From Phallusia mammillata (Eukaryota): DNA of 64,000 bases. The position numbers were made by a program, and so were the translations under genes. Within the stretch, counting starts at the first letter, position 1. Each line of letters opens with the position of its first letter. The stretch lies in the NCBI GenBank assembly GCA_965637545.1, contig OZ281494.1, forward strand, positions 1,364,001 through 1,428,000, given 5' to 3'. The notes under the pieces are model-generated. The model was not told where the DNA came from, searched no databases, and saw only the letters and a list, made by a program, of their open reading frames with translations. Below are positions 5,111 to 63,266 of this stretch, one piece after another.

Positions 5111-7743
5111 ATGCCTGGGCATTGGTTGAACAAATGTTTAGAAATTTTGCTGATTGTTTATTGTTTACAAGCACAAACTGAAAGTAAGTGTCAATTAATA
5201 CTAGCTAATAAATTTTGACAGTGATTTATTTATTCAGATAATAACGCAAAGATTAAAACAAGGAAACAAAAAAGTTCAAAACATTTTAGGTTACCAAATC
5301 ACTTTTCAAGCAGTGGAGGACAGTTTATTGTTATTATCTGACGATCTTGTGGATGCAAACACTGCACAGGAGAAATGTTCGTTGCTGGGTGGAAATCTTG
5401 CAATGACTGATGACCCACAGATCAACATAACTCTCACTCAACTCATGACAGACAAATACACGACAGGTTTGCTTTGTTAAAAAGGGGAAGCTCAGCATTG
5501 TTTAAATGCAAGTTTTAGCGACAAAAGTGAGTTATTGAATATTATTAGAGATTTAACCACAAATCAACCTTTTACCGCAAGTCAACTGAATAGAACAGAA
5601 TTTGTTTCAGGATTGCAAAGGGTTTATCTTTTTTATGATCAATCTAAAAAATACGAACGCTACAAATACTCAAAAAATCAGACTGAAATTGCTTTCTGGA
5701 GTTCAACAAAATCTCTCGGACATCTGTGGTATTTCGACTTGTATAAAAGGTGAAGCTTTTTGTATGCACGTGTTGGTTTTGAGCAAACGGGCAAAAGAAC
5801 CAACCTAATAACAACTAACCTTATATCACTTGACTATATGTATAATTTTCAGTAAATCTGAAACCGAGATGCAGGACATTTACTTTTGTGATGCTCCAGA
5901 ATGGGCGACAAAAAACAAGGCTAAGTGGGGAGTCTTTATTGGTAAAACATGTGAATATCTTTTGAACGGAAATCCAAATGGTTCGTGTCACCCAGCTTGT
6001 TTACGCATATTCCTAATAATATGTAAACCATACCTCAGTAGTTACTATTTTTAGATACTTTATTAAACGTTTTCAAAATTACCTTCCATACTTCCAAGCA
6101 TCTAACTTTGCCCTCAGTGCCAAAACGTCATGGATTAATTTTTTTAAGAAACTAATGTATTTTCATTCATAATTCAATAATTATTTGAATATGCTCATTG
6201 CGTAACAACTGTGTGCGAAAACGATCACATGACCGAAACATTTTGCAGGATGGAAAGTCAGATTTACATTGTTTTCTAAAACATCAAAAGGACAAAAAGA
6301 GATATACAACTATAGAAGCAATAGCTTTGGTTCGGACAAGTTGCGCAGTGTGAATGAAACTGACGGAAATTTCTTAAACTACAAAGGATCGTTCCTGGCT
6401 CCAGGTGAGTTTTGTTTCAAAATATAAAAATACACTACGCCGGTTTGGATTCCCAAACACATACAATTTTTAGACATTAACGTTTTGGTTGGAGCTCGTC
6501 ACAACACGTCGTTGAATGGTTGGTATTGGAGCGACGGATCTTTTGCAAACTTTCCTGTTTCCAACGTTACAACTTGCCAGCAGGGAGCTTTGCATTATGG
6601 AATCGGATGGGAGCAGTCAAGCATGAACTGCAGCGGTGAACCGGCTTACTACGCCTGTCAAGTGAAACGTGAGTGTGATTATATTTATAACTTACATTAT
6701 ATAAAACTTCCCAACTGCATTGTCATATGCAGTTGTCACAACCGCAAAGACACTTCCGTGCAACGCTTCAACAGTGGTGGTCAGTTGGAGTGGACTCGAA
6801 AAATTTATCAACATAAATAGAAAATTTGCCCAAGTAATATCGTCTGTCTAAAAGTTGTTTTCTTAGTATTTGTATTAGATATCACCAGAACTTGCTTTGT
6901 CTTTTGGTTCAGGTTGAAATAAATGTTTTGGAACCAAACTGGAGAATGTATTCTTTGTACAGCGATTTGTCAAGAACTGTCAATAATCTTAACTACTCAA
7001 CTAAATACAATATCAAGGTACAATATTCTTTCCAATAACAACATAATAATAACTAGACCAGGCTGTTTGGTAACAGTGTGAGTAAATTGTCAAAGAGTGT
7101 ATTGTAATGTTTACTCATCTGGCTGATTTTTATCCCCCTTATTGTTGCAGGTAATAGTAATGCTTTGTGGTGTGCAGAGTGCTAATGTCACTTCAAATAT
7201 TGTAGTGAACACTTTCGGGAATCCCCCATCGAGTTGCTTTCCTCGAGGTGAGAAGAACATGACATGGTCCAGCATATTCCGTACATCTTGTAAGTAAAAT
7301 AGTAAGCAATTTTGATTCTATTTAGGAATTTATTTGGAAAGCAAATCGTTTGTTGTTTGGAGTCAGTAAACTATAAAATGTAAAAAAAAGTAGGCATCGG
7401 GTAGGACCAAAAACAAAAGGTAATGGTATTATATTTTAGCACTGACCACATTATCACCAACAAACCAACCAGTTGACAATGGTGGTATTTATCTGACAAT
7501 CATTGGGATTTTGGCTGGTGGAATGGTGTTTCTGGTGGTTGTGATTGTTGTATTAGTGATTTTGCTATTACGTCAAAAAATGACTAACCAAGCAACAAAC
7601 GCTAAGTCACAAAATCAAACAACAAAAGGTGAGGGAAGAAAAGTGCACAAATACTAGTTAACAAGTGATATTATGTTTTTGCAGGTTCCTCTCTCGGTAA
7701 AAATGCAAACGAGCGGGTGTACGAAACCTTTGACAAATTGTAA
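5111..7743 (+). CDS. Gene A: phosphatase-less type I receptor (SP - split CTLD with insert - 1 FN3-like - TM - short tail ending VYETFDKL), 472 aa
   Basis: 11 GT-AG exons: 5111-5183, 5290-5466, 5611-5749, 5853-5980, 6249-6404, 6474-6668, 6733-6833, 6913-7017, 7151-7247, 7440-7628, 7685-7743. Total 1419 nt, no internal stop. SP is MPGHWLNKCLEILLIVYCLQAQTE. CTLD motifs: [13 protein letters not shown] and GWYWSDGS..C..GW..MNC..YYAC. TM is IYLTIIGILAGGMVFLVVVIVVLVILLL. AATAAA at 7980. Confidence 0.88.
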
Positions 7744-10261: not shown

Positions 10262-13200
10262 ATGACTGGAGATTGGTTAAACACAGTTTTAGAAATTTAT
10301 CTGATGGTTTATTGCTTGCACGGACAAACTGAAAGTAAGTGTCAATTATCAAAGAGTTTTGAACATGCGCATGTTTAATTTCAAACAAATCAAACAAATA
10401 GGGATAAATCATTGTATGTCAGGCCTATCGAAGGCGCTATACATAATAAAGTCGATCTCGCAAACATTCCAGTATGACAAGGCATTAGAAATATCACAAC
10501 TGCTGTGGGATAAAAACCATGAAAAAAGCCTTTCAGGGTCACCCGGTCTGCCAACTGAGAGGGTTAGTTCTAATCTCGTCCAATATCAAGCCACACACAC
10601 AATTGCTTGTCACTTATGCTGCACATGTCAGCTTTGTAGGAGGCATTGTCAGTACGACTAAACGTTTGGGGATTTTTTAACTGAGGGCACATATAGTGGA
10701 GCTTCAGAAATAGAGATACCACTGGGCAGCTAAGATTAACATCTAATCAGCACTAAACCGTTCATCACAGCAGCGATTACGGCATAAACATTTGTGAATG
10801 AGTGTACGCCAGACTCATTAAAGACGATTTACCTTGTTGATGCCTTCTGATACACAAGGCAACCCGGACTGGCTTGATTAGTTATAACGCCGTCAATAGG
10901 ACGCTTTGGGACTAATCCCTGTTGTAAATGTGTGTCTTTCAAAGTCAAACATCGGTAAAACTGTAGTTTCAGCGCGATTTAGTCAAGGTATATGCATTAC
11001 GCACCGACGAAAAACAAGAAAACTTTGTAGGTTGCGAAAACAAATTTCAAGCAGTGAAGGACAGTGTGTTAATATTATCTGACGATCTTGTGGATGCAAA
11101 GACTGCACAGAAGAAATGTTTTTTGCTGGGTGGAAATCTTGCAATGACTGATGACCCACAGATAAACACAACTCTTACGCAACTCATGACAGACAAATAC
11201 ACAACAGGTTTGTTTGATGGAAATAGTAAATAGTCATTGATTTAAATGCAAGAGTTTGCAGCGACAAAACTCATTAATTCAGACCTATTGTTGATTTACA
11301 TTAGAACATAAATCCACTGTATAAAACCGAGTTGTTGTTTAGATTTGCAGCGGGTTTATGTTTTTTATGATCAATCAAAACAATACGAACGATGCAGGTA
11401 CTCAAAAAATCCGACTGAAATTGATTTCTGGAAATCAACCAAATCTCTCGGACATCTGTGGTATTTCGACTTGTATAAAAGGTAATACACATTATTAGTG
11501 ACGAAGTCTAATTTCAAAACTTGACGAATGTTGGTTTTGATCAATAGTGGTAATTTTAGTAATCAAAGACGTAAAAACTTTACCTATTCGCAACTGACCT
11601 AACACCACTGTACTTAATCATTTTCAGTAAATCTGAAACCGCGATGCAGAAAATTTATTTTTGCGATGCTCCAGGATTCGCCGCACGAAACAAGGCCAAG
11701 TGGGAAGTGTCTATCGGGACAACATGTGACTTCATTTTGAACGGACGTCTAACTGGTTGGTGTTAACCATCTTGTTTACACAAAAATCTTTACACAAAAT
11801 GCACACCACACCTCAGTGGCTACTACACAAAAATTTTCAGATACTCTATCTGATATATTTCAGACGTACTTTCTAAGACTATTAACATGACTGCCCAACG
11901 CTGTAGATAATGTTTTTGTGAAAGTGTTCTCTCAGCTCAATATTTAAGTTCAACAATTTGGCAACATATGTGAGATCTTTCACTTGATTTTCACCATTGT
12001 GCAAAATAGATCACTTGACAAATATATTTTGCAGGTTGGAGGGTAAGATTCACGTTGTATTCTGAAACTGTGAACGGTCAAAAAGAAATATACAACTACA
12101 AAAGTAGAGGCATAAACTCGGACAAGTTGCGCAGTGTTAATCAAACATTTGGAAATTTCTCACAGTACAATGGATCGTTCCTGACACCAGGTGAACATTT
12201 GGTGTAAACAACATAACACACTACTTCAGATTTGATACACCAACGTGTGCACTTTCTAGATATTAAAGTTATTGTTGGAGTTCGTTACAACACGTCGTTG
12301 AATGGTTGGTATTGGAGCGACGGATCTCAGGCAAACTTTCCCGTTTCCAACGTTACAACTTGCCAGCAGGGAGCGTTGCATTATGGGATCGGATGGGAGC
12401 AATCGAGCATGAACTGTGGTAGTGAAACAGCTTACTACGCTTGTCAAGTGAAATGTAAGTAATTACATAAACGAAAAACAAGCATCAAACAATCATTGCA
12501 TATTTCTGGGATTTGTTCCTATACTGTATAAGGTTGTAATTATTGTTTTGTTTGTTTTAGTCGCTGCAAGTGTGGAAGCATTTCCATGCAACGCTTCAAT
12601 TGCGATTGTCAGTTGGACTGGACTTGATCAATTCATCAACAATAACAATAACAACAATCTAACAGCGCAAGTAAGAACTAATTGTACCTGAAGATAATCT
12701 GACACCTAAAATATGTGATTTGTTTCTGGTGTTGTCTTTAGGTTGATATTCATGTTTTGGAAACAAACAGAAGAATTTTGGCATCATATGCAGATTTATC
12801 GACAACAATTGATAACCTAAAATTTTCAAAAAGATATAACATTAAGGTAAACGGTGTTTTAAAGTCGGCGAAAAAATATTTTATATTTATTTCATATGTG
12901 GTGTTTGTACCTGCAGCCTTGTGTTTGATAAAAACAACATCCCATTTTTTATATAAATATAAATGCAAATTAATCCAATTTTTGCTTAAAAAAATCTGAA
13001 AGTATCACGCAAAACAATTTACTCACTTTATTATTTTCAGATCACAACAATCCTTACAGGATGCCTAAAAGCTAACGTCTCAACAACCAAAGTAGTAACA
13101 ACACATGGAAACCCCCCATCGAGTTGCTATCCTAAAGGTAAACGGATGTGTTACTTGTGGTATTTGTATAAAGCTCAAAAAACATTTTCAGTAAACACGA

Positions 13201-16200
13201 CTGCAGAGACATTTCCATGCAACGCATCAACTGTGCTTGTCAGTTGGACTGGACTTGATCAAATCATCAACGAAAACGCACTAACAGCACAGGTACGAAA
13301 CAAAGTGTTGAACTATTGCTTTATGTAATTTTAAACACACATAAAAAATCAAACCAAGTAAACAAGTATTTTCCACCATAAATATCTACAGGTGACGATT
13401 GATGTCCAGGGTTGGAATCGAACAATCTCTGTTTTTTATTCCGACGGTTCCGCAACATTAGAAAATTTTTTAAACTCCACGTCGTATGATATTGAGGTTG
13501 CCAAAGTTTAATTTCACTATTTGCGTTGAAAACTATGCATCTTTTGCTGCAGCTAACAAACATTTTTGTATTCCAGGTGAAAGTGATAGCCACCGGTTCA
13601 GTTGACACTAACATCAAATGCAATCTAACAGTAACAACTCCTGGTAATCCCCCTCCAAGCTGTTTTCCTAGAGATAACACGACCTATCTTGCAAAGAGTG
13701 TTGGAATGATTGCTGGTCTAGTGATCGGGCTGTTGCTTCTGCTACTTGTCATTGTTGGGCTTGTGGTCAAGTTCATTCGTCGAATGCACAGGTTTGATCT
13801 ACCGATTTAGTTTAAACAATTATTGGGTTCGAACGGCGAGTAGTGAATCTTAAACTTAAGAGAAGGAATCTGAATTATCGCCATTAAAAAATAAAACCTT
13901 AATCGGTAGTTATGTTTTACTTATTTTCAAGTGCAGAAAAGACAAGGAGAAGTTCCAAACTGTCAAACAACTGAATCACCTCAAGGTGCCTTTAGTAAAC
14001 TCGACTTGTCCCTGCTAAAAATAAACTAAATTCAAAACCAACTACAACTTCTATTTTTACAACCAAAATTTGTTTGAAGTTCTGAAAAGTTTTTAACGTA
14101 CAATATTACACTTGCATTGGTCGTAGTAACTTGTACACATAACTGACAGGCCCGGAACTTGTAAATAATTGTAAGTACGTATAAAATTTAATATTAAATC
14201 ATAACGCAAACATTTTGGTACTTAGTTTGCTTTAACCTAAAACTTATTCTCTCATTTTCGACAATGTATTTTTTTCAACATGTTTTCTTGTTTTTCTTTT
14301 TTTTTTGTATATTTATGCCAGTCCAACCAAAAACTTTGTTTGCAGTGGCAGACGGTGTGTATCAAAACGTAGCGCATGAAGGCAGATCAAACAAAAACTT
14401 GTTCGAGTTGTTCAAGAAAAATGCTGAGTCAGTACTTCTTTTGGCCAACGAATTTGAGGTTTGACTTTTGTGGTAATAATGTCGAACAAATTTATGTTAA
14501 GCCCCAATCACCACACTGTAGTGTCTTCCCCATGCAATTTGGACGTAGTTTTGGTTTTGCAGCCCTTTCTGAAAGCAGAAATCAAGAAAGTCTAGCGTAC
14601 AAACATCGTAAATTAACAGCGTGAAAAATCATCAATAAACGAACAAAAAACACTTAAAATGGACTTTGGAACTTACACTCTAATCACAAGAACAGCCAGA
14701 CCAAGTGAGACCAATTTATAAACATTTTCAGGAAGTTCAAAACAAAAGCAAAAACAACCAGAGAACAAGGGACGTGTCACAGTTGCCGCAAAATGCTGCG
14801 AGAAACCGCTACAAGGACATTTTCCCATGTAAGTACTGCAACACAAAATGTAAAGTAGCTAGATCAATTAGGTTCTACCATTTGCCTAATTGTTTCATGT
14901 CGGAAACAGTGTATGGCAGAAACAATGTTGCAATGTTTGTCTTTTGCAAGCTCGCAGTAAACCAAGAATAGAAATAAACCTTATTACAAAAGATAAACTG
15001 ATGCTGTTTGCTTTACACTTATAGAGAGGAGTAGTCAAACAAAGTCCTGTTTTCTTAAAACTGACAAATGCTTTCATTAGCACTGCCTTAAAAACAACAC
15101 AGACAAATAGGTTGTGCATAAAGAGCACATTGTGAGAATGTTTTTACAACGGGTGATTCAATTATGCAAACAGTTGCACGTATAACTGGCTTACTGCAGT
15201 AACAACTTGTGTTTGTTTAATAGACGATCATGCTCGAGTAGTTTTGCAAGGAAGCGGTGGAAACGATTACATCAACGCCGCTTATATACCGGGTTACGAT
15301 AACGAGAGGAAGTTCATCGCCACTCAGGGTCCGAAGAAGGAGACAATCAGCGATTTCTGGTTGATGGTTTGGCAGGAAAACTCGAACATCATCGTAATGC
15401 TCACTGGTTTGGTGGAAAACGGAAAGGTGAGTTTTGTTAATTAACAGCTTGGTGTAGAGTGTGGTGTGAAATTTACTGCAAATGCTTAGGTTTGATCTTG
15501 AATATTATGTAATACGTTTATATCATTTGGCTCAGTGAACCTGCATTGTAAAACCATTCAAGTAAGTGTGTCAATTTTAATCCATTTTCTTTTTTCAGTA
15601 ACCACGCCTTCATGCAATGCATCTGTTATCAGATTCCAACCAATGCAGCTTTACAATACGAAGCTATTTCGGTTTCCGTATGCGATGTAAATGAAAGCAA
15701 CCTGTACAATCTGATTACCGTCGACCTCCGGTCTGCAACTAAGGCATTCGTAAGTTAAACTTTTACTTGAACTGTTAACTTTTAAATCACATTTCTTTTT
15801 AGGCCATCGTACAAAGTGAGTATGATTTATGTACGTTGTGCCATTGATGCAAATCCACGTGGCATTGGGCAGTATAAAAATATCACTAAGTAACAGTGCT
15901 GTTCAAAACGTAGCTTAACTTGTTTATAGACTGCCCAGCAATTGCTGCTTGTGCAAGTCAAGGGATGGAGTGACGTGGAACGACCGCCCAAAGAAATTGA
16001 TTTTATCAAAATTATCGAGAAAATGCAACTGATGAAGGCAAAACAGAATTGCCAGTGTGTGTTGGTTGCTTGCAGGTAAACCTTGTGCCTGTATCGCATT
16101 GATTCGTGTCAGCCATAATTTTCAATAACCCTAAACACAAATCGTGTCTACACCTGAAGCCCACCTTCGCTACATTTTCCAATACGACTTGTTCTTTATC

Positions 16201-16480
16201 GCAGTAACGGATGAACGAGAACTGGGACTTTCATCGCTCTGGTGAACATTCTCGAACGTTTGAAGGCTCTAAAGCGGGTGGATGTATTCCGAACTGTGAA
16301 AGACCTGAGAGATATGAGACCGAATATGGTCGACAACAAGGTAGTGTTTTACGTAAGCTTCAGAAATAAAGATTGCGTCTTCAAGCAATGTTTATGTTTT
16401 TACAGGAACTCTATAAATACTGCTACTCGGTCGTCATGCATTATCTGTCTGATTTCGACACTTATTCAAACTTCAAGTGA
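10262..16480 (+). pseudogene. Gene B: intact SP-CTLD/insert-2xFN3-TM, followed by a crippled PTP region (may encode a truncated receptor)
   Basis: Open exons: 10262-10334, 11031-11207, 11343-11481, 11628-11755, 12035-12190, 12260-12454, 12561-12670, 12742-12846, 13041-13137, 13192-13292, 13392-13496, 13577-13791. Lesions: the juxtamembrane acceptor is altered at ~13929-13931 (CAA versus CAG in F); a ~1.5-kb deletion at ~15555 removes the CEQYW, WPD and HCSAGxGR exons; TGA at 16212-16214 in D2. Last exon 16406-16480 is [24 protein letters not shown]. Confidence 0.85.
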
Positions 16481-31020: not shown

Positions 31021-31079
31021 TGTACTTAAGCTTTCTAACTAACATTAGTTCATTCACAACAGTCTAGCTAAAATGTACA

Positions 31080-33680: not shown

Positions 33681-33858
33681 AAGCTCATAGATTCCATCCT
33701 GCAAATATCAAATATATGTGATATCCAAGACATGAAATGAAAAGGAGTCTGTATCATCGTTACGAAGTGAAAAACCTGACAAACCTAAACTGTAAGGTTT
33801 TGGCTATAATATGTTATTGTGATCCAACAAACGTTACTGAAGTAAGTAGAACACCAAC

Positions 33859-39281: not shown

Positions 39282-39319
39282 GAGATATATATTTCACCTA
39301 TTCAGGCATCGTCAGTCTC
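39282..39319 (-). ncRNA. Candidate minimal hammerhead ribozyme (mirror copy, left arm)
   Basis: Exact reverse complement of 41982-42019. Confidence 0.6.
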
Positions 39320-40633: not shown

Positions 40634-40833
40634 NNNNNNNNNNNNNNNNNNNNNNNNNNNNNNNNNNNNNNNNNNNNNNNNNNNNNNNNNNNNNNNNNNN
40701 NNNNNNNNNNNNNNNNNNNNNNNNNNNNNNNNNNNNNNNNNNNNNNNNNNNNNNNNNNNNNNNNNNNNNNNNNNNNNNNNNNNNNNNNNNNNNNNNNNNN
40801 NNNNNNNNNNNNNNNNNNNNNNNNNNNNNNNNN
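40634..40833. other. 200-N scaffold gap whose flanks overlap by 69 bp
   Basis: 40565-40633 is repeated exactly at 40834-40902. Confidence 0.95.
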
Positions 40834-41981: not shown

Positions 41982-42019
41982 GAGACTGACGATGCCTGAA
42001 TAGGTGAAATATATATCTC
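41982..42019 (+). ncRNA. Candidate minimal type I hammerhead ribozyme in the Penelope 3' region
   Basis: GAGA-CUGACGA-U-GCCU[GAAU]AGGU-GAAA-UAUAUA-UCUC. This gives the core CUGANGA...GAAA, a 4-bp stem II, a palindromic minimal stem III, an AUA cleavage triplet and a 4-bp stem I. PLEs are known carriers of minimal hammerheads. Confidence 0.65.
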
Positions 42020-53200: not shown

Positions 53201-56200
53201 ACCAGCACATTAGCTAAACCAAAATGTTGTAATGAAACGGCAGACGTACAATCGTAATCAAATGTAATCAAAATTGTGGTCAAGTAAACACAAATGTTAG
53301 TAAAGATTCATATTCAGGTTTACAACGCCTCCTCACCAGTGCATGCGCAAATGGTTCGCGTTTATTGACGGCGAGAATTATCATGAGGCCCCATACTTAC
53401 GTAACTGTTTTCAGTGTCAAGTTGTGTATTGAAGATAAAAATACACAGCAATAACATAACTATAGTCAAGTCGATTCATAACATCAGGCCAACTAAAGTC
53501 TAATGTAAGTAAAGCATACCGTTCAAAGTTAGGTTTATTGAATCTATATGATTAATGTATCAAGTGCAATTGGGTGATGATCAGCTTACCACATTTTGAA
53601 TCATGTCTTTTCGATTCTCTCTCATTCTTAACACGGTTCGCGGCACATCAACTGTTCCTTTGTCGTCAAGTTCATGAAACAAAGTGTCCATTGCTATGTA
53701 AGTGCCTGTGCGTCCCACTCCAGCACTACATACAAACATATGCTTCATTTGAGTGATCAAATAACATAGGGTTGATTAAGTCTTTACCTGCAGTGCACAA
53801 TGATTGGAGCATTGGTGTTTTGCAAATCATCAACCATGTTACGTAGGTGGATCATGTTGGATGTAGTTACTGGAATCCCATGATCGGGCCAAGTTGTAAA
53901 CTGCAGCTGTGTTACCGTTCGTTGCTCCTGTAAAACATACCCGCATAACTTATAATAACCTTTTTGTAGGGGTTGATAAGATTATGGGCAATCAATCGAA
54001 CTTCAATCAAATTATATCTAGCATCAAACAGTTCATGTTATTTTAATTATATGAAGCGGTTTTGGTCAGAACTTAAAAGGTTATCCAATCTCGAGCTAGT
54101 GGATTTCAAAGACATTCTATTGATAGACGCTTTGTATTTGCTGCAGCTCGTTTGCAGTCATTTCCTGCCTTTTTCTCTACGCCAAACCCTGATGGAAAGA
54201 TCAGTTTCAGTTCAATTAATCAACAGGCAAGCCTCGTTGTATTCCAAGCTTTTGTGTTCAAGGAACCAAAGCGGTTTTGAAAACTTGTCAGACTGTTCGG
54301 AACAGATTTGATATTTTGTTCTTTGTACTTACCCTGTTTGTGAATAAAACCAACTGTCGTTGAAGAATGCCACCGATGGTTATTTCAAGTTGTGTTCGAA
54401 CTGTAAGCACTGGCGACAATTCCCTTTGAGATTCAACGTCTGGCCAGTATTGCTCGCACTTTGACTGGTCGAAAAACAAGGTTCGCAACATTAGTGCAAA
54501 TTGTACAATAATTTACGCTTGCTTGTTTTCCCTTAAAATGGGTTAAACCAGGGGTGCACAACCTTTTCGCTAAGACGGCCGCATCGCAGATATTTTTCAA
54601 ACGACCGCCAATTAACCTAACTGCTTGTTTTTGTTTTTAAAATGATTATGTGAAAATAGGCTTTGTCCGACATACATAAACCATCTAATGGAGTCCAAAA
54701 AGCCCGGATAATTTGAAACTTGATCCACAGATTAAGCTAAAGTCTTACGACCAGTCTGAGCTATATTTATGACGTTATAATCTATATTGTGACGTAAGAG
54801 GGGACTGTTTACTTGCATTGTTTGCACACAATAGGCGTGTGTAAGTGTGATGCACAGAGTTACTAGGCTGGTAATACTCTTTACAGTCTTACAAAATCTA
54901 TTTAAAGCTGTTTGAAAATCAGCATATTTAGCAAAGGAGTTTTATTTACGTCACAGCCACCAGTGCATATATTTTAATAAACATGTTCACGGCGGTACAA
55001 AATCGTCTATTCGGCCGTAGGTTGTGCACTCATGAGTTAAACATATATGTCATGTGGCATGATATGGTCGTTGTAGTACCCAATCATGACATCTTATAAG
55101 TTACGTATTACTCGAAACCCAAGTATGGCTATGCATTATGCTGATAACAACTTGGTCATTAATCACACCACAGTGGATTACTCACTAAACACTTCCTTGA
55201 TTTAACCACAGTGCCCTGGCGAATGAAGGTTTATTTTCATAAATGTTTATTAGTGAAAAAGGAAAGCAATAACCAACCTTTCCGTTTTCCCTCAAGCCAG
55301 TGAGCATTACGATGATGTTGGAGTTTTCCTGCCAAACCATCAACCAGAAATCGTTGATTGTCTCCTCCTTCGGACCCTGAGTGGCGATGAACTTCCTCTC
55401 GTTATCGTAACCCGGTATATAAGCGGCGTTGATGTAATCGTTTCCACCGCTTCCTTGCAAAACCACTCGAGCATGATCGTCTATTGAACAAACAAATCAA
55501 GAAGCTAATAGCTGATTACGTTTCCACGAGATAAACTGATCTGTAATCTGTTTGTTAGTTTTTCGTCAAGAAGGCGCCTGGTTGATTTTTTTTAACAACG
55601 ATAAATAGTTGGTAGCATTTGATAGCAACAAAACAGATTTGCTGATTAGTGTTTTATGTCATTGCTTTTCTGCTTAGGTGACTTAAAAAATACCTTTTCG
55701 CGCAAGAATCTAAGGTATTTATACGTTTTCTACTTACAAGGAAAAATGTTCTTGTACCGGTTTCTCACAGCGTTTTGCGGCAACTGTGACACGTCCCTTG
55801 TTCTCTGGTTGTTTTTGCTTTGGTTTTCGACTTTCTGAAACAGCAAAACATCCAAATATGAAATAGTTTAAAACTCCGATTTTCCAGCATTATTCTGATG
55901 TGACAATAAGGAAAAGTCGCTCGTGATCATTTTCTCTGTTAAAGCTGATTCAAGTGACATTACAGTGAAAACAAATCATCTGTAAATTATGTTATTTCTG
56001 GTGCAATATGATAACGCCTGATTAGATGAATTTTCCCCTCGATTTATCATTCTACTGATTGTGACGTTTCCTGGTTTCGATTGTGACGTATAGTCTGTGA
56101 ATGAACCTTCCGGGTTTCGCTACGTGTATTCGATTAACAAATCTTACACCAGTAACTAACCTTAAACTCGTCGGAAAAAAGAGATCCTGACTCCACGTTT

Positions 56201-59200
56201 TTTTTGTACAAGTCAAACAATTTGGTGGCTCTGCAGTTGGACGCCGCGGTTTCAGGAAATAGGTTTTCGTAGACTTGGTTTTGAACTTCAGGCGCTAACA
56301 ATTCAAAAATGAACAAGTTTTCATCAAATTGTGCTAACATTTTGAAAATAGGTGAAGTAACACAAACAAAAACACTAAACATTGTGTCAGAGTTCATCCA
56401 ACAAACACATTTGAACAAAAACGAAGATGCTAGTTGTGAAATGTATCTCGTACACTTAAAATACTCAACATTTAGTGTTGACTCATAAGTCTAGTACGAT
56501 TTGTGGCGGTTCAGATGAGAAACGTGTAAAGTATCCCTTTCTGATGTGTGTGTCAGTAAAGATAAAAAAAACATAAGACTTTGGCAGCACCTGAAAATCC
56601 AAGGCTTAAAGATTGATGAACTCCCTCATGACTAGGTTGATCCGTTCCAAGCCTATAAAGCACAAAAGATCTTCAATTTCACTTCTATTGTGCACTCTTA
56701 AATTACCCTCTTAACCGGCATGACTAAGCGCAGGTTTTTTCATGCATGCTATTTTGACAAGGTTTCAATATTTCGAACCCAAAACGAACTATTATTGACA
56801 ATATCCATCGCAACAAGTACCTGTTTTTTCGTCTTAAAAACATGACCACCACCACAACAATGACAAGTACCAGAAACAACAGCCCGATCACCAGACCAGC
56901 AATCATTCCAACACTCGTTGAAGTCGCATTTAGATTTTCTAAACAAAACAGTTTGTTACACAAGGAGCACTGCTTTGGAGCACTTGCGTAACCGTGTGTA
57001 ATCAAAGACGTAAAAACCTGTTTTAAAAATCGATCGGTGCTTACGTCAGCATATTGTTAGCACTCAAACCAAATGTCACGAAGCCTTCACAACTTCACGA
57101 CATATGAGTGAACTTACGATACATGCCTTTACCTTTGGGATAACAGTTTGGAGGTAGATTCCCCGGAGTTTTTACTTTTTGATTGGATGTGATGTTTGTG
57201 TTGATTGAACCAGTGACAATCACTGCAACCTGGAATAAATAACAACGACAGTTCACACATTTTTATATGCAAGCTGTTGTATTTCTTTGTACTGTTTGCT
57301 TGAAGAGTAAAATCAAATGAGAAACGAATAAATGAAACAAGCATTTATAGCTTGGATAATTGCCAATCTACATAGCACAGACAAATAGTAATCACCACAG
57401 GCAAAAGAGTAATGAATGCGGTTCAATTACCAAATCACGTGACTGTGGAATGCGTGTCCGCGATTCACTTCCTTAAGGAAAATACACGAAGCGGAACCAT
57501 AACACAAACCATACAAAAACCGGCAACGTCGAACTATATTAATTAACGAAAGTTTGCATCTTGTAAAGAGTAAAACGTTTCTCACTTGTATATTATAGAC
57601 GGTAGAATGCTCCAAACTTCCTAGTGTTGTCGAATGGTCTGAATACGGAACTCGGAATTTCTTGTTTAATTTCGTGAAATGGACTTCCACCTGTTAGAAA
57701 CAACAAGGATTTCGTTGTTACTGCATTTTGCCTAGCGAACTTTTTCTAACTAGCGCAAACTGATTAAATCGAAGCGTAATATTCATTATGTTGGGAAATT
57801 CAAACGAAAAATGATGTATTGAAACTAATTCCTTTACCTTTGCATTTAAATTGTGTTTGTTGATGAACTGATCCAATCCAGTCCAACTGACAACAACTGA
57901 TGAGGCATTGCATTCAAAGGTCGTGGTATTGGTGACAACTGTTGTGCATAACGAAAAAGAAACAATAACACTTTTAAACCAAATGTGTGAATAAGTGTTT
58001 TTTACTTGTTGTTTTACGTTTTTTTATTTGTAATTTAATGTAGGTTAAACCTTATTTTATTTCTACTGGTGCAAATGTGACAATATATACGTCAGCAAAT
58101 TTCAGTTATTGGGCAAGTTCTGTTGCTCATTACACATTACACAAGAACTAATTGTTATTTTACCTGCAGGAAAGCAGTTTGGAGGGGGATTTCCCGGAGT
58201 TGTTACTGTCAGATTGGATGTGATGTTTGTGTTGATTGAACCAGTGACAATTACTATGACCTGGAATAAATAACAAGACAAATTTGTTTGTTTAGAAAAT
58301 ATTGAAGCAAAAAGGGTGGGTTTGTTTAGAACAGTGCTTGGTGATACTTAATACGAACATTAAAAAACCTGCATCGTTATTAATTGGAGTTTACAATTGC
58401 CGGAAGAAAGCTAAGCGTCGCAGTATCATAATGTGGCGTACTGAAAGGGTTTCGATATACGTGTAGTTATTTAATTACAATTAAAACGACAAACGAGTTA
58501 AGCGGATACACCACTTGCATTACTGCTTAGAATGTAATGAGATAGACTTCATATAGCCATTAGTAAAAAAATTAAGGCGAGCTAAAAGTCTTACTCATGT
58601 CTCGTATTAGCATGGAACACACTTACGTGTATAATATTGACTGTAGAAGGCGTTAAACGTCGTACAGTTGCCGATTTGTCTGAATACTGACCGTAGATTT
58701 TCTCATTCAATACTGGTGTGAAAATCTCAACCTGAGCACATTTAACTCATTTAAAGAAATTATTTTTTACGAACTTTTACCACTATATTGCGGATAATAA
58801 AGGTTTGTAACCAGGCAAACAATCGTAAACGAGTAAAATGTTTGTTGAGACTCAAAAAATTGATCTGTTAACAGTAACACCTTTACCTTTGCAATTAATC
58901 CGTTTTTGTTAATAAACTGGTCAAGTCCAGTCCAACTGACAACAACTGTTGAGGCATTGCATTCAAAAGTCGTTGCGTTGGTAACAACTGTTGAAGCATA
59001 ACGAAAATGTTATGCTCCCAAAAAATCACCAAAAATAGCTGCTAAGATTTCTCTTAGCTAAAAAAACGTCAGTGACGTATGGAAAAGAATAACCATCAGC
59101 ACAAAATCAAAAGCAACTTGGCCCAGGATTGTGTTTGGAAACAATAACACTTTTGAAATTAAATGTGTGAAGAAGTGTTTTTTACTTGTTGTTTTACGTT

Positions 59201-62200
59201 TTTTTGGAATTCAATTTAGGTTAAACCTTACTTTATTTCTACTGGTGTAAATGTGACAATATATATGACAGCAAATTTCAGTTATTGGGCAAGTTCTGTT
59301 GCTACTTACGCATTACACAAGAACCAATTGTTAATTTACCTGCAGGAAAGCAGCTTTGAGGGGGGTTACCGGGAGTTTTTACTGTCAGATTGGATGTGAT
59401 GTTTGTGTTGATTGAACCAGTGACAATCACTGTAACCTGCAATAAATAACAAGACGAATTTGTTTTGTTTAGAAAATATTGAAGCAGAAAGGGTGGGTTT
59501 GTTTGAAACAGTGCTTGATGATACCTAATACGAACATTGAAAAACCTGCATTTTTTGGAGTTTACAATTGCCGGAAGAAAGCTATGCGTCGCAGTATCAT
59601 AATGTGGCGTACTGAAAGGGTTTCGATATACGTGTAGTTATCTAATTACAATTAAAACGACAAACGAGTTAAGTGGATACACCACTTGCATTACTGCTTA
59701 GAATGTAACAGGATGGATTCGATATAGCCATTAGTATAAAAAAATTAAGGTGAGCAAAAAGTCTTACTCATGTCTCTGTAAGCACGACACTCACTTACGT
59801 GTATAATATTGACTGTAGAAGGCGCTAAACTTCGTACAATTGCCGATTTGTCTGAATACTGACGGTAGATTTTCTCCTTCAATACTGGTGTGAAAATCTC
59901 AACCTGAGCACATTTTACTCTAGGAATGAAATTATTTTTTCTCGAACTTTTACCCATATATTGCGGATAATAAAGGTACCTTCACCTCTGCAATTAATCC
60001 GTTTTTGTCAATAAACTGGTCGAGTCCGGTCCAACTGACAACAACCGTTGAGGCGTTGCATTCAAAAGTCGTTGCGTTGGTAACAACTGTTGATGCATAG
60101 TCACAAAATTTAAAAAAGAATGTCAAATTATGCCTTTAACCCACACAAAGATTCTTTTATTACCTGGAGGATAGCAACTCGATGGTGGGTTAGGGAATGT
60201 TCTGAATTTACGCGTGAAGGAAACGTTAGAGCTAACGCAACCAGAGAGAATTGCTGTCACCTGGGATTTAAATGTTGTTTAAATAATTCTGCACAATTTC
60301 CGCGTATTACGTTGTTGAGCTACTTCGTGTTGTTACTGTTTTAGGTTATGTCGACGGTTACCGTTAACCTGTAATGTAAAAAAGAAATGTTCGCAATTTT
60401 TGACATAAATACCTTTAATTGATATTTTGTTTCAAAACTTAAGTTTCCAAGTGTAGTCGATCCATCTAAATACGGTGATGTATGTCTTTCGTTCAGTACC
60501 GAAACATGGATTTCGACCTACGTACAACACATTTCTCAATCTATAAAAATTTAACCTGCTTTGGATAAATGTTACCACTGGACTGAGATTATGTTTGTTG
60601 ATAAATTGATCGAGTCCAGTCCACCTGACCACCACAGTTGAAGCGTTGCATCTAACTCTCTTTACTTTAGCTTTGACTAAAAGTGAAATAACAAGTTTAA
60701 TTAAAATGCAGCAGCAGATTTGCACTGTATGTTTAATTTGTTTTTATTGCTTTGCAGCAACAGAAATATTCATCCACTATCTCTGTCAATTTTTCTACAG
60801 CATTTACTTGGACAAACACTGCCCTGGACTCTAAGTCGCGTGCTGTGATGTTCGATACTATAGTTCTATAGTTGGCTATTTTGTTATTTGGCAACAATTG
60901 CTGGCTAGACAAACGACGAATTCGGAACGTGTATTGAATCATAACCAAGGGATGGAGAAGTAATATGGACATGACTGTAAACCGCCATCGCATAGCTTTG
61001 AGGCCTGATTTCACAGTATGTGTCTGCAACTTTTGTATCTATAATATTACCTAGCTATAAAAAGTTAGTTGCTGGACTTAACCCGGTGCCAAACGGTGCC
61101 ACGAATCTCATAAGGTTAAGATTAGGGTGAAAAAATGTCGTAATGATTAAAAGACATATCATAAAGCAGCGGGTGACTGACGTATGATTAAATGTCGTAT
61201 ACGGGTGATGAAATTTCGAGTGTGATAAAACGTCACTCAACCGTGCTAAATAAACCGAAAAAGTCCTGTTTAAGGTATTGTCTATTTTTGCCCATCATGT
61301 ATGCCTTTTCTACGTGTTGTTCTTTTTAGCTGTACTTATTGTAGGACATGTATGGATCTGTCAAACAAACTTTCGAATTTCAACCGGCTTTTCAATACCA
61401 ATTCGGCATCGGGCTTACACTTTCCAGGTAATGGTCAAATTTCAGACACACTTACAGCCATAAATGTAGACAAACTGTGGAGAAAACAACTTCACAAACC
61501 GCAACTAACAATTGAATGTATACGATATTTAATTTTTGTTTCCTATTTTTAACTTGCGCTAAACTCCAGCCAACCAACTCGCGATATCACTCACGTTTTA
61601 CTTGATAAGCGTAGTAGGCCTTTCTTTTGCACTTTATGCTTGATTGTATATGTATTGTTTATTTTAAGATGAATTGTTTTGTTTTTACTCACGATTACTT
61701 TACTCACGTTTCACTTGGCAAGCGTAGTAAGCCACTTCCCCATTGTAGTTCATGCTTGACTGCTCCCATCCGATCCCATAATGCAACGCTCCCTGCTGGC
61801 AAGTTGTAACGTTGGAAACGCGAAAGTTTGCCCGAGATCCGTCCGTCCAGTACCAACCATGTAGCGATGTGTTATAACGAGCTCCAATAAGAATCCTAAT
61901 GTCTAGAACAACATTTGCGAGTGTTATTTATAAATAGAAATAACACGATCAAAACATATTTTCTTTGTATGTTTTCAAACCAAACGCTCACTTGGTACCA
62001 GAAACGATCCCTCATATTTGGTAAACGTTTCATACGTTTTATGGACACTGCGTAACTTGCTAGAAATTGGATATGTATATCGCCCATAGGTGAATATTTC
62101 TTTTTGGCGCCCCAAGGTGTTAATTTTTGAAAACAAGGAATACCGGAATCTCCATCCTGAAAAGAATACAGATTTCGTTGTAGGTCAAACCTATGTAGAT

Positions 62201-63266
62201 GGTTTTTGTTTGACTGCAGTAATAAAGATGAAAGAAAGAACGTATTAGTCAAAACGGGATAAATAGCAAGATAGTATCACAATAGTATTTTTATTGGGAA
62301 GCTACACGGAAATTGATGAATAAGTTTGTTTTTGGTTGTTGCAGGGGACTTTAGACATCGTAGTGTGCTTGTGGCCTTGGGTAATGTGTTAAGTATATTT
62401 AGGCATCATTGGTATATTTAATTCAAAATTTTCGACATTTTAGTACAAACATTTTGTTGTGGAACGTTAACAGTTACTAATCTGAGTAAAACGCAAACCT
62501 TGGACACTACAGTTTTCTCCAGTGGTTACATTCCACCTCTCCGTGTCTCTGCCATTCGAATATTTGCAGAAGTAAATGTTTTCACCATAAGTTCCAGGAT
62601 TGCTATCAGAGAATAATCTGTTTAACTAGTTTGCATCAATTTGTTTGTATTTAAAATTGTCACCTTTTGTACAAGTCGAAATACCACAGATGTCCAAGAG
62701 ATTTCGTACTACTCCAACCGACTTCAGCGGGATTCTTTGAGTATTTATATCGCCTAGGATCGGTGGTATTGTAAAAAATATAAACTCGCACTAAATCTGA
62801 AAAATGTTACGATTATTTGTTTTTTACTTTATTTTGTTTATTATGTACAATGTGTTGATTTAAAGCTAAGTTTATCCTCAACTATGGTTACAACATGGTC
62901 TGTTGTTGAACTATAAACCAGTTTTACAATACCAAGATTTTGCATTATAAAAACCTGTTGTGTGTTTGTCTGTCATGAGTTGATTGAGAGTTGTGTTGAT
63001 CTGTGGGTCATCAGTCATTGCAAGATTTCCACCCAGCAAAGAACATTCCTCCTGTGCAGTGTTTGCATCCACAAGATCGTCAGATAATATCAACACACTG
63101 TCCTTCACTGCATTAACGGTTTTGTTACAACCTGATTAAGAACATTATTGTTTAAGATTTTTATTTTATAATGTCTCAGATTGCCATACTTACTGGGAGT
63201 TTGCCCCTTCGAGTAACAAACCAACAGCAAACATACAAGTATTTCAAATTTCATTTTCTCAGTCAT
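50240..63266 (-). CDS. Gene G: apparently intact receptor-type tyrosine phosphatase (SP - split CTLD - 4 FN3-like - TM - D1 - D2), ~1312 aa, RPTP-alpha/epsilon-like C-tail
   Basis: Paralog of D with the same 34-exon structure. The JM donor is intact (CAG|GTGCTG at 56591/56590). WPDHG and HC|SAGVGRTG are intact (exon junction 53788/53725). One D2 exon has an in-frame 6-nt deletion. No stop found in the exons I read. Stop at 50242-50240. Confidence 0.87.
50727..51223. mobile_element. G-specific hAT-like insertion with one recognisable TIR
   Basis: About 500 bp absent from D. The right end is GTTTGAGAACCACTG, and the segment is flanked by TATTAAAG/TATTGAAG (TSD-like). The left TIR is not recognisable. 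Confidence 0.6.
54549..55034. mobile_element. hAT-type MITE, duplicate of 21542-22026
   Basis: Same TIRs and GGTTAAAC/AGTTAAAC TSD at the orthologous intron position in G. Confidence 0.8.

What the first reader, a model, noticed from the sequence alone, without database searches (positions are those of the whole stretch)
5111..63266. Expanded cluster of receptor tyrosine phosphatases with a lectin-type, variable ectodomain: candidate invertebrate recognition/immune receptor system
Seen: at least six paralogs plus remnants share SP - split CTLD - FN3-like x1-4 - TM - (D1-D2), in both orientations. They range from intact (A, G) through partly disabled (B, D) to dead (E, F, remnants). Known: classical tandem-domain RPTPs carry Ig/FN3, MAM, carbonic-anhydrase or short glycosylated ectodomains. 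I do not know of a CTLD-with-insert ectodomain on a D1-D2 phosphatase. Inference: birth-and-death turnover, a variable distal domain and a stalk dense in NxS/T sequons resemble immune or allorecognition receptor clusters (CD45-like, or NK-complex-like).
Basis: partly seen in the sequence, partly recalled or inferred. Interest (0 to 1): 0.9.

Follow-up and report, generated by a model that had tools for sequence, protein, structure and literature searches.

The report
Lectin-like receptor tyrosine phosphatase gene cluster
This 58-kb stretch of an invertebrate (reportedly sea-squirt) genome really holds six related genes for cell-surface tyrosine phosphatases with a lectin-like tip on a sugar-coated stalk; only one full copy is intact, transcripts like it are spliced, and an immune role is untested.

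Summary
Six paralogs (A, B, D, E, F, G) and three remnants share signal peptide, split C-type-lectin-like domain (CTLD), 1-4 FN3-like modules, a membrane span and a D1-D2 phosphatase.

G (63266-50209, minus) reads open through 26 canonical exons (1,032 aa) to the end of a D1 with all catalytic motifs. Spliced RNA contigs join its last FN3-like exon to the membrane-span exon and the five D1 exons.

D is G's near-copy, with a GT>TT splice-donor lesion. B lost half its phosphatase. F has stops and frameshifts. E is debris. A has no phosphatase exons.

The locus is a roughly 31-33-kb tandem duplication of a tail-to-tail gene pair, patched by gene conversion. The N gap lies in a transposon palindrome inside intron 1 of pseudogene F and breaks no coding exon.

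Both CTLD halves are recognised as lectin-type. The 139-codon piece between them matches nothing known, is under purifying selection, and could be skipped in frame. Every exon class has pooled dN/dS below 1. The lectin halves are the most conserved part.

The immune or allorecognition reading is untested. The phosphatase is PTP-alpha/epsilon-like.

This scan had already noted arrays described as the same family at five other places in this genome. Verdict: a new variant of a known kind, of moderate interest.

The parts
50209..63266 (-). Gene G, the intact full-length copy: signal peptide, split CTLD with insert, four FN3-like modules, membrane span, juxtamembrane, D1, D2.
   Evidence: 26 exons from 63266 to 53590, all with AG/GT, open for 1,032 aa. 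D1f and the D2 exons were placed by homology. RNA contigs laid on D carry G-type letters at most sites that distinguish D from G.
62955..63131 (-). G: CTLD N half (one exon, phase 1-1), covering beta1, alpha1 and alpha2.
   Evidence: In the Atlas feature search, at least 90 of the 100 best named clusters carry PF00059; score 0.93, 173-176 shared features. 81-84% identical to D's copy in A, B and F.
61992..62796 (-). G: three insert exons, ins1 62796-62664, ins2 62617-62499, ins3 62156-61992 (417 nt, 139 codons), lying between the two CTLD halves.
   Evidence: Canonical splice sites and an open frame in A, B, D and G. Pooled dN/dS 0.22-0.35 with near-saturated synonymous divergence. No family match. 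Inclusion in mRNA was not tested.
61708..61902 (-). G: CTLD C half (one exon, phase 1-1), covering beta2 to beta5.
   Evidence: A profile search of the PDB returned only CTLDs: KLRG1 at E = 0.11 and Dectin-1 three times. In the Atlas search, at least 97 of the 100 best named clusters are PF00059. AF2 of the exon alone gives five strands at pLDDT 71.
57133..60676 (-). G: four FN3-like modules, each of three exons (101 + 105 + 97 nt, phase 1-1). Modules 2 and 3 are a 90.6% tandem duplicate.
   Evidence: The eight segments hit by an HMM of nine window modules that I scanned are all PF00041. RNA joints confirm the exon boundaries of modules 3-4.
56821..56938 (-). G: membrane-span exon.
   Evidence: A hydrophobic stretch followed by RRKNR. 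RNA contigs join it to the FN3-like exon upstream and the juxtamembrane exon downstream (in D coordinates 23806-23923).
53014..56652 (-). G: juxtamembrane exons and D1 (JM1, JM2, D1a-D1f). Motifs: [20 protein letters not shown].
   Evidence: PF00102 on the exons. A single RNA contig of 1,962 nt joins all of them. The RNA loose end reads [10 protein letters not shown], which fixes D1f.
50209..52451 (-). G: D2, a degenerate second phosphatase domain. KNRY has become NAFT, WPD has become WND, and the Cys-x5-Arg motif is kept as CSNGSTR.
   Evidence: PF00102 matches the equivalent D exon at E = 5.3e-10. The splice pattern at the start of D2 is unresolved.
17665..30252 (-). Gene D, near-copy of G (99.87% over the ectodomain, 97.2% from the membrane span through D1, 92-93% in D2). 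It has a splice-donor lesion after JM1.
   Evidence: The donor at 23576/23575 reads TT in D and GT in G. The nearest GT in D would shift the frame by one base.
5111..7654 (+). Gene A: signal peptide, split CTLD with insert, one FN3-like module, membrane span and a short tail. No phosphatase exons follow it.
   Evidence: An open canonical spliced model exists. No PTP exon lies between 7654 and 10262. A strong donor at 7627 leaves the true 3' end open.
10262..16550 (+). Gene B: the outer part and membrane span are open, the phosphatase part is broken.
   Evidence: Open model for the signal peptide through the membrane span. JM1 was not found. A deletion of about 1.44 kb relative to F removes D1c to D2b. 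D2e has a stop, SNG*TRTG.
32477..35187 (-). Gene E: a decayed copy. It keeps a signal-peptide exon with a stop, and fragments of the CTLD N half, ins1, ins2 and D1a.
39125..49028 (+). Gene F: pseudogene. The signal-peptide exon (39125-39197) is intact. Intron 1 holds the transposon palindrome and the N gap. It has two FN3-like modules.
   Evidence: Two stops in D1c and frameshifts in D1d and D1f. Signal-peptide exon and donor shown.
39221..42080 (.). Inverted pair of a probable Penelope-like retroelement around the N gap (40634-40833).
   Evidence: The arms are 99.65% identical. GIY-YIG matches are weak, at E = 0.0032 and 0.00067, below Pfam's cut-off.
2895..3248 (+). Remnant copy: a signal-peptide-like exon with a stop and a fragment of the CTLD N half.
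30761..30981 (-). Remnant of ins1 and ins2 (with a stop) upstream of D. Its twin at 63775-63995 lies upstream of G.

Best explanation
What it is. The window holds one array of a multigene family of type I receptor tyrosine phosphatases that I could retrieve from no other species. Each full gene encodes a signal peptide and a C-type-lectin-like domain. That domain's coding sequence is split at the alpha2/beta2 junction by three extra exons of unknown fold. Then come one to four heavily N-glycosylated FN3-like modules, one membrane span, and a PTP-alpha/epsilon-like tandem phosphatase. D1 has all catalytic motifs. D2 is degenerate.

How the array evolved. A tail-to-tail gene pair (B/F type on +, D/G type on -) was duplicated in tandem. 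Short-tract gene conversion then homogenised some exons: both CTLD halves, D1a and D1b. Copies decayed by a splice-site mutation (D), a deletion (B), stops and frameshifts (F) and fragmentation (E). G is the working full-length receptor, and transcripts like it are made. A is a phosphatase-less sibling.

How it probably works (inferred, not shown). The lectin-like tip binds an unknown ligand on another cell or particle. It is more likely a protein or a non-calcium-dependent ligand than a classical sugar. Ligand binding or clustering, or size-based exclusion of the tall glycosylated ectodomain from close contacts, would change D1's access to membrane-proximal phosphotyrosine substrates, as is proposed for CD45, CD148 and PTP-alpha. 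A would bind the same kind of ligand without phosphatase output.
For: Shown:
- Exon maps of six copies.
- G open through 26 canonical exons.
- PF00102 on D1 and D2 exons.
- Spliced RNA contigs from four runs with GT-AG introns join the FN3-like exon, membrane span, juxtamembrane exons and D1a-e, then continue at least 820-915 nt further. Depth is zero in most intron bins.
- Both CTLD halves are recognised independently. The canonical cysteines of alpha1 (N half) and beta5 (C half) are both kept.
- The eight FN3 HMM hit segments scanned are all PF00041.
- 23 sequons in 676 aa.
- Among the 10 best D1b representatives that I had named, the receptor phosphatases with a subtype name are PTP-alpha/epsilon-like (crinoid, amphioxus, salamander). 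A mixed profile of a crinoid PTP-epsilon-like protein plus window exons lists PTPRA/PTPRE of vertebrates.
- Tandem duplication with an identity gradient from 80% to 99.9%.
- Synonymous divergence differs about ten-fold between adjacent exons: A versus D, CTLD N half dS 0.12 against ins1 1.39. Pooled dN/dS is below 1 for every exon class.
- Insert exons have pooled dN/dS 0.22-0.35, so they are protein-coding.
- All ectodomain units are phase 1-1.
Against: - No relative with this ectodomain was retrieved from any other species, so conservation of the architecture rests on paralogs.
- Pfam itself does not call Lectin_C or fn3 on single exons. I could not submit spliced proteins.
- Inclusion of the three insert exons in mRNA was not tested. 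My one read-laying run covered 20500-26499.
- The RNA contigs match neither D nor G exactly. They are G-like at 20643, 20688, 20822 (in X1 and X2 only) and 21422, D-like at 20697, and carry private differences. They may come from other individuals or an unresolved copy.
- D2's first exons are not resolved.
- Ligand, substrates and tissue are unknown.
Confidence: 0.75

Rival explanations
1. One reading: the cluster is an immune or allorecognition receptor system. It would be CD45-like or NK-complex-like, with paired receptors in which A is the partner or decoy of the phosphatase-bearing copies, and would be driven by diversifying selection on the distal domain.
For: - A multi-copy cluster with rapid birth and death.
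- The only PDB sequence hits of the CTLD C half are the NK/myeloid-type CTLDs KLRG1 and Dectin-1.
- A dense glycan coat.
- A phosphatase-less sibling.
- Several further arrays in the same genome according to earlier scan notes.
Against: - Pooled dN/dS is below 1 for every exon class, and only one of 66 pairwise values exceeds 1 (fnB1, B versus D, 1.12). The CTLD halves are the most conserved ectodomain part.
- There is no EPN/QPD or WND motif.
- A's membrane span has no charged residue, and no ITAM or ITIM was identified.
- There are no tissue, polymorphism or ligand data.
- An earlier follow-up on a sister array judged the activating/inhibitory logic 'not borne out as stated' (not checked by me).
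Confidence: 0.2
2. The ectodomain tip is not one CTLD with a nested insert. It would be two tandem lectin-like domains: the N-half exon plus ins1 and ins2 (143 aa), then ins3 plus the C-half exon (120 aa). The inner halves would have diverged beyond recognition.
For: The two sizes fit CTLDs. CTLDs are often encoded by three exons. An earlier follow-up on a sister array speaks of 'two lectin-like domains' (unchecked). Ins2 has two cysteines and a tryptophan in a CTLD-like order.
Against: - ins3 is not recognised at all (recognition 1232, best score 0.61), whereas the true N half scores 0.93.
- hhalign finds nothing between ins1+ins2 and the C half, or between ins3 and the N half (probability 0.3% or less).
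- The alpha1 cysteine in the N half and the beta5 cysteine in the C half are the canonical partners, and they would be orphaned in a two-domain reading.
- The second domain would lack helix alpha2.
Confidence: 0.15
3. The three insert exons are cassette exons. The main product would be a compact, ordinary CTLD with the N half spliced straight to the C half, and the insert would appear only in some isoforms.
For: Skipping all three exons (133 + 119 + 165 = 417 nt) keeps the frame and puts alpha2 next to the WIGL-like strand at normal spacing. ins3 alone, and ins1+ins2 together, are also phase 1-1 units.
Against: The insert exons keep open frames, canonical sites and pooled dN/dS 0.22-0.35 in four copies, so they are translated at least some of the time. 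No RNA was laid on this part.
Confidence: 0.25
4. The D/G duplication, or its 6.3-kb stretch of 99.87% identity, is an assembly artefact such as haplotypes placed in tandem. The locus would then hold fewer genes than it appears to.
For: Only 8 differences in 6.3 kb between 24.6-31.0 kb and 57.6-64.0 kb. An assembly gap and a palindrome lie between the units. The DNA-like runs hold only about half the sampled words.
Against: Identity falls stepwise along the same unit: 99.87%, 97.2%, 92-93%, 80-84%. The partner genes B and F differ by a 1.44-kb deletion and by different lesions. That pattern fits old paralogs with a recent conversion tract, not duplicated haplotypes.
Confidence: 0.1

Closest known systems
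Vertebrate R4 receptor phosphatases PTPRA and PTPRE (PTP-alpha and PTP-epsilon)
   Same: Type I membrane protein with a tandem D1-D2. D1 carries NRYKN, YDHARV, WPD and [11 protein letters not shown]. Among the 10 best D1b representatives that I had named, the receptor phosphatases with a subtype name are PTP-alpha/epsilon-like proteins of a crinoid, amphioxus and a salamander. A mixed crinoid-plus-window profile lists PTPRA/PTPRE of vertebrates.
   Different: PTP-alpha and PTP-epsilon have a short glycosylated ectodomain with no recognised domain. Here the ectodomain is 676 aa, with a CTLD plus four FN3-like modules. D2 is much more degenerate. I built no tree, so orthology is not shown.
CD45 (PTPRC) and CD148 (PTPRJ): tall glycosylated receptor phosphatases of immune cells
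   Same: A large, heavily N-glycosylated FN3-type stalk on a receptor phosphatase. The size-exclusion mechanism proposed for them (reviewed in PMC10815196) is a plausible model here.
   Different: They have no CTLD. CD148 has a single phosphatase domain. The CD45 phosphatase domains are not the nearest relatives. Neither is a tandem multigene family.
NK-cell and myeloid C-type lectin-like receptors (KLRG1, Dectin-1, the NK gene complex)
   Same: The CTLD C half matches only these in the PDB. Like them it lacks the calcium/sugar motifs. Like them the genes form clusters that gain and lose members.
   Different: Those are type II proteins that signal through ITIM or ITAM motifs or through adaptors. 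Here the CTLD sits at the N-terminus of a type I protein that carries the phosphatase itself, and the domain is interrupted by 139 extra codons.
Lineage-specific invertebrate receptor phosphatases with recognition-type ectodomains
   Same: A PTP-alpha-like or related D1-D2 behind a lectin-type or adhesion-type ectodomain. Examples met here are amphioxus fibrinogen-C + fn3 + PTP (P0285) and oyster sushi or F5/8-type-C + PTP (P0139, P0152). From memory only, sea-urchin genome annotation names lectin-bearing receptor phosphatases; I could not find a paper for this.
   Different: None of the 150 nearest D1b representatives shares this ectodomain. Lectin_C is not among the 25 commonest families in the first 480 residues or fewer of 100 of their ectodomains.
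Sister arrays of the same genome noted earlier by this scan
   Same: Described as lectin + FN3 + PTP-alpha/epsilon-type receptors in tandem arrays with phosphatase-less members. They lie 246, 408 and 620 kb before this window and 14.9-15.4 Mb beyond it.
   Different: I have not seen their sequences. One note speaks of two lectin-like domains. This window adds the duplicated convergent gene pair, the gene-conversion mosaic and the splice-lesion twin D.

Membership tests
Classical receptor-type PTP with tandem domains | A PTP catalytic domain (PF00102) is present twice in the cytoplasmic part. | tested here: met
   D1 exons at E = 8.5e-27 and 1.3e-11; D2 exons at E = 5.3e-10 and 0.12. Exon maps.
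Classical receptor-type PTP with tandem domains | D1 carries the catalytic motifs KNRY, WPD, HCx5R and the Q loop. | tested here: met
   RNRYKN, TTWPDHG and [11 protein letters not shown] appear in the G and D translations. The Q loop reads QNVKQY instead of QTxxQY. Activity was not assayed.
Classical receptor-type PTP with tandem domains | Signal peptide, ectodomain, one membrane span and the phosphatase lie in one transcript. | tested here: met
   One 1,962-nt RNA contig joins the last FN3-like exon, the membrane span, the juxtamembrane exons and D1a-e. Shorter contigs join FN3-like modules 3-4. The link from the CTLD exons to the FN3 exons rests on the open frame and conserved order only.
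R4 subtype (PTPRA/PTPRE) | The phosphatase domains are closest to PTP-alpha/epsilon. | tested here: inconclusive
   Best hits are named PTP-alpha/epsilon-like. No phylogeny was built, and identity in the best-conserved exon is only 51-58%.
R4 subtype (PTPRA/PTPRE) | A short ectodomain without recognised domains. | tested here: not met
   The ectodomain is 676 aa, with a CTLD and four FN3-like modules.
C-type lectin-like domain (PF00059) | A match to the family model. | tested here: inconclusive
   Pfam finds nothing on either half-domain exon alone, and the spliced domain could not be submitted. The language-model search puts at least 90 and at least 97 of the 100 best named clusters in PF00059. 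The only PDB profile hits are CTLDs, with best E = 0.11.
C-type lectin-like domain (PF00059) | Canonical disulfides: alpha1 Cys to beta5 Cys, and beta3 Cys to the Cys after beta4. | tested here: met
   All four cysteines are in place in A and B. The cysteine after beta4 is replaced by Y in D and G and by S in F. Pairing is inferred from position only.
C-type lectin-like domain (PF00059) | Calcium-dependent sugar-binding motifs (EPN or QPD, and WND). | tested here: not met
   The C half reads ...[18 protein letters not shown]...GWEQSS... in all copies. It is therefore lectin-like in fold, not a classical lectin.
Fibronectin type III domain (PF00041) | A match to the family. | tested here: inconclusive
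   Pfam finds nothing on single exons. An HMM of nine spliced modules hits RPTP ectodomains weakly (protein E from 0.003, single-stretch E 0.015-0.33). The eight hit segments that I scanned are all PF00041. The size (about 100 aa), the VSW strand and the L..L..T.Y.[IV].V motif fit.
Paired activating/inhibitory immune receptors | The partner lacking the inhibitory module has a charged membrane-span residue or an ITAM-type tail. | tested here: not met
   A's membrane span has no charged residue. Its tail as read ends ...KVHKY, and a strong donor at 7627 leaves the true end unknown.
Paired activating/inhibitory immune receptors | Diversifying selection or high polymorphism at the ligand-binding face. 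| tested here: not met
   Pooled dN/dS per exon class is 0.12-0.58. Only one of 66 pairwise values exceeds 1 (fnB1, B versus D, 1.12). Site-wise tests and population data were not available.
   hhalign of ins1, ins2 and ins3 against each other gives probabilities of 2.8% or less. PDB profile hits are unrelated proteins.

The most novel reading that the evidence does not exclude
An invertebrate lineage, reportedly a sea squirt, built a large and fast-turning-over family of recognition receptors. In these, an NK-receptor-like lectin domain carries a nested domain of unknown fold inside its alpha2/beta2 loop and is wired directly to a tyrosine phosphatase. This differs from vertebrate inhibitory receptors, which recruit a phosphatase through ITIM motifs. 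Phosphatase-less siblings such as A would act as partners or decoys. The system would serve self/non-self or microbial recognition.
Probability: 0.15. Interest if true: 0.8.

Novelty: new variant of a known kind. Interest (0 to 1): 0.45.

Why it matters
Receptor tyrosine phosphatases are known with Ig/FN3, MAM, carbonic-anhydrase or short ectodomains. A type I receptor with an N-terminal C-type-lectin-like domain on a PTP-alpha/epsilon-like tandem phosphatase, expanded into several arrays, is an architecture for which I found no paper.

If the tip really binds ligands on other cells or microbes, it would join recognition and inhibitory output in a single protein, and it would be worth testing in a sea squirt, a close relative of vertebrates. 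The locus is also a clean example of birth-and-death evolution with exon-scale gene conversion, and possibly of domain insertion into an intra-domain phase-1 intron.

Its value is limited in three ways. The function is unknown, the insert's fold and its inclusion in mRNA are untested, and the scan has met what is described as the same family repeatedly in this genome.

Tried and rejected
1. Finding the annotated or orthologous full-length protein.
- The search of protein representatives with the D1b exon gave 150 PTPs. None shares the ectodomain.
- Two homologous-protein runs used alignments that put window exons beside a long scaffold protein. They returned only oyster sushi-PTPs or a flood of vertebrate PTPRA/PTPRE.
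- The CTLD C-half ORF alone found no candidate.
- So presence of the family in other species could not be tested here.

2. Pfam on single exons finds no Lectin_C or fn3. Spliced proteins have no reference, so I did not submit them to Pfam, structure prediction or homology search.

3. AF2 on the CTLD C-half exon alone gave pLDDT 71 and five strands. Foldseek against the PDB gave nothing at E of 0.001 or better; a few NK-type CTLDs appear only at ranks 21-40. This was uninformative.

4. The insert as a beta-trefoil or as diverged CTLD halves: hhalign, PDB and Atlas searches were all negative.

5. My own first guess for the exon after D1e, a '[10 protein letters not shown]' ORF at 53365-53475, was wrong. 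The RNA loose end shows the real exon at about 53112-53014.

6. Literature searches on C-type lectin + RPTP + sea urchin, Ciona, ascidian or tunicate, on 'PTPRLec', and on Styela PTP multiplicity found nothing relevant. The sea-urchin phosphatase paper I recalled is not held.

7. Identifying the organism through the look-up of encoding contigs with the GPCR ORF found nothing on record.

Full report
LAYOUT. The window has about 37% G+C and an intron-rich, eukaryotic gene structure. A self-comparison shows that 12556-30986 and 43612-64000 are two copies of one unit. Identity rises along the unit: 80-84% (12.5-15.5 kb), 92-93% (15.9-20.2 kb), 97.2% (20.2-24.6 kb) and 99.87% (24.6-31.0 kb, 8 differences in 6.3 kb). 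Each unit holds two genes tail to tail: B and D in the first, F and G in the second. Upstream lie gene A and a small remnant. Between the units lie the decayed copy E and an inverted transposon pair.

THE N GAP (tested as asked). The gap at 40634-40833 lies between the arms of a 99.65% inverted repeat, 39221-40374 and 42080-40927. The ORFs in the arms give a weak GIY-YIG match (E = 0.0032 and 0.00067, below Pfam's cut-off). Together with the inverted arrangement this suggests a Penelope-like retroelement. F's signal-peptide exon, with ATG and donor, is at 39125-39197, and its next exon starts at 42313. The palindrome and the gap therefore sit in intron 1 of F, which is a pseudogene anyway. No phosphatase-gene exon touches the gap. 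Whether the two sides are continuous cannot be told, and I did not fill it.

GENE MODELS. Exon-wise blastn and tblastn with D and G exons map every copy.
- G is open for 1,032 aa through 26 exons, all with AG/GT. These are the signal peptide (63266-63194), CTLD N half (63131-62955), ins1-3 (62796-61992), CTLD C half (61902-61708), four modules of three exons each (60676-57133), the membrane span (56938-56821), two juxtamembrane exons, and D1a-e (55834-53590). D1f (about 53112-53014) and the D2 exons (52451-50209) follow. The joins at the start of D2 could not be fixed without RNA.
- D1 reads RNRYKN, YDHARV, TTWPDHG and [11 protein letters not shown].
- D2 keeps the Cys-x5-Arg motif (CSNGSTR) but has NAFT for KNRY and WND or WSD for WPD.
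- Pfam PF00102 matches D1 and D2 exons.

RNA. Four runs labelled 'RNA?' hold 7-10% of the words of 17900-27800. Their contigs, laid on 20500-26499, skip introns with GT-AG ends on the minus strand, and most intron bins have zero depth.
- One 1,962-nt contig joins 24119-24217 (last FN3-like exon), 23806-23923 (membrane span), 23577-23637, 23148-23281, 22725-22821, 22265-22467, 21326-21458, 20782-20920 and 20583-20718. It then runs on for 820 nt. In another run the continuation is 915 nt.
- Shorter contigs join the exons of modules 3 and 4.
- So ectodomain and phosphatase exons are in one transcript.
- The loose end after 20583 translates to [10 protein letters not shown], which identifies the real next exon.
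- At sites that tell D from G, the contigs are G-like at 20643, 20688 and 21422 in all four runs and at 20822 in X1 and X2. They are D-like at 20697, and they have private differences. I read this as G-type alleles of other individuals. Transcription of D cannot be excluded.
- The CTLD region was not covered by my single read-laying run.

STATE OF THE COPIES.
- D has TT where G has GT at the donor after the first juxtamembrane exon (23576/23575 against 56590/56589). The only nearby GT would shift the frame.
- B lacks that exon. It has lost about 1.44 kb, so D1b is followed directly by D2c, and it has a stop in D2e. Its signal peptide to membrane-span part still reads open.
- F has two stops in D1c and frameshifts in D1d and D1f.
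- E keeps a signal-peptide exon with a stop and fragments of four other exons.
- A has an open model through one FN3-like module and the membrane span, and no phosphatase exon follows. A good donor at 7627 means its tail may continue in an exon I did not find.

THE LECTIN-LIKE DOMAIN. Pfam does not see it on single exons. Three independent lines support it.
- A profile of the C-half exon from four paralogs, searched against all PDB sequences at E up to 10, returns only four hits, all CTLDs: KLRG1 at E = 0.11 and Dectin-1 three times. They are aligned at the WIGL / W-x-W-x-DGS region. The same test on insert exons returns unrelated proteins.
- The language-model search puts at least 97 of the 100 best named clusters in PF00059 for the C half, and at least 90 for the N half, with scores of 0.91-0.93.
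- The cysteine in helix alpha1 (N half) and the cysteine in the last strand (C half) are the canonical partners. The beta3 cysteine and the cysteine after beta4 are present in A and B.
The EPN/QPD and WND motifs are absent, so this is a lectin-like fold rather than a classical calcium-dependent lectin.

THE INSERT. Between the halves lie three exons of 133, 119 and 165 nt.
- They keep open frames and canonical sites in A, B, D and G. Pooled dN/dS is 0.22-0.35 at near-saturated synonymous divergence, so they encode protein.
- ins3 is not recognised by the Atlas. hhalign finds no similarity of the insert to either CTLD half and no three-fold repeat.
- All ectodomain units are phase 1-1. The insert sits in a phase-1 intron at the alpha2/beta2 junction, and skipping it keeps the frame.
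- My preferred reading is a domain inserted by exon shuffling into an intra-domain intron. A tandem pair of CTLDs and cassette splicing remain open.

THE STALK. Each module is about 100 aa from three exons, with one cysteine near each end. An HMM of nine modules gives only weak hits in RPTP ectodomains, and the eight hit segments that I scanned are all PF00041 by Pfam. G's ectodomain has 23 NxS/T sequons in 676 aa, 16-17 of them in the four modules.

EVOLUTION. Synonymous divergence is a mosaic. The pooled synonymous difference (pS) is 0.15 (CTLD N half), 0.27 (CTLD C half) and 0.05 (D1b), against 0.64-0.65 for ins2 and ins3. Between A and D, dS is 0.12 in the N half and 1.39 in the neighbouring ins1. 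Short gene-conversion tracts explain this best. They also reach pseudogenes: D1b of B and F is 94-96% identical in protein to D's. Pooled dN/dS is below 1 for every exon class, and only one short pairwise comparison exceeds 1.

RELATIVES. Among the 10 best D1b representatives that I had named are PTP-alpha/epsilon-like proteins of crinoids, amphioxus PTPRA and salamander PTPRE. None of the 150 representatives shares the ectodomain. Their ectodomains hold fn3, Ig, carbonic anhydrase, sushi and F5/8-C domains, and Lectin_C is not among the 25 commonest families. I could not retrieve any family member from another species, and I found no paper on such a receptor.

EARLIER SCAN NOTES. They report arrays described as the same family at five other loci of this genome, call the organism a sea squirt, and say the family type is present in other sea-squirt annotations. 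I treat these as leads only.

FUNCTION. The anatomy is shown. The mechanism is inferred: ligand binding by the lectin-like tip, with clustering or size exclusion of the tall glycosylated ectodomain, would control D1's access to substrates, and A would be a signal-less sibling. An immune or allorecognition role is possible but has no direct support here.

Noticed in passing
window 1-1150 (+): The 3' part of an adhesion-type GPCR gene. It has a GPS cleavage motif (CNHLT; PF01825, E = 0.00077) followed by a secretin-family 7TM region (PF00002, E = 7.8e-18). It is unrelated to the phosphatase cluster.
   Followed up: partly
window 39221-42080: Two copies of a probable Penelope-like element (weak GIY-YIG match) in inverted orientation, 99.65% identical, with the assembly gap at the centre. 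They are inserted right after F's signal-peptide exon.
   Followed up: partly
window 24945-26963 and 57959-59977: FN3-like modules 2 and 3 of D and G are a 90.6% tandem duplicate with a period of about 1.18 kb. RNA contigs show 'goes back' joints (26419>25611, 25715>25148). These could mean alleles with a different module number, or assembler cross-overs between the repeats.
   Followed up: no
window 15427-15647 versus 46539-48224: B's deletion of about 1.44 kb joins the N-terminal half of D1 (D1a, D1b) directly to the C-terminal half of D2 (D2c-f). It looks like an unequal exchange between the two phosphatase domains. The product would be a chimeric single domain, but D2e has a stop.
   Followed up: partly
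window 53365-53475 (-) and 20358-20492 (-): An ORF in the intron after D1e reads ...[10 protein letters not shown]..., resembling the QYIFIH motif that ends a phosphatase domain. The RNA skips it. It may be a relic exon or chance.
   Followed up: no
CTLD exons of A, B, D, F, G (for example 63131-62955 and 61902-61708): The cysteines vary together. D, G and F have an extra N-terminal cysteine (CNKT) and have lost the cysteine after beta4 (MNY or MNS). A has the reverse pattern and B has both. This hints at an alternative disulfide.
   Followed up: no
window 21540-21584 and 21989-22011: RNA contigs with depth up to 38 map to short pieces inside the D1c-D1b intron and run on into unrelated sequence on both sides. 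This is probably a transcribed repeat from elsewhere.
   Followed up: no
window 31189-32392 versus 37372-38701: Two inverted-repeat blocks (79-82% identity) link the 3' part of decayed copy E to a stretch just upstream of F. This suggests a further plus-strand remnant between E and F.
   Followed up: no
window 13496-13807 (+): In B, the last FN3-like exon and the membrane-span exon lie in one open frame. This is intron loss or read-through, unlike D and G, where a 194-nt intron (57132-56939 in G) separates them.
   Followed up: no
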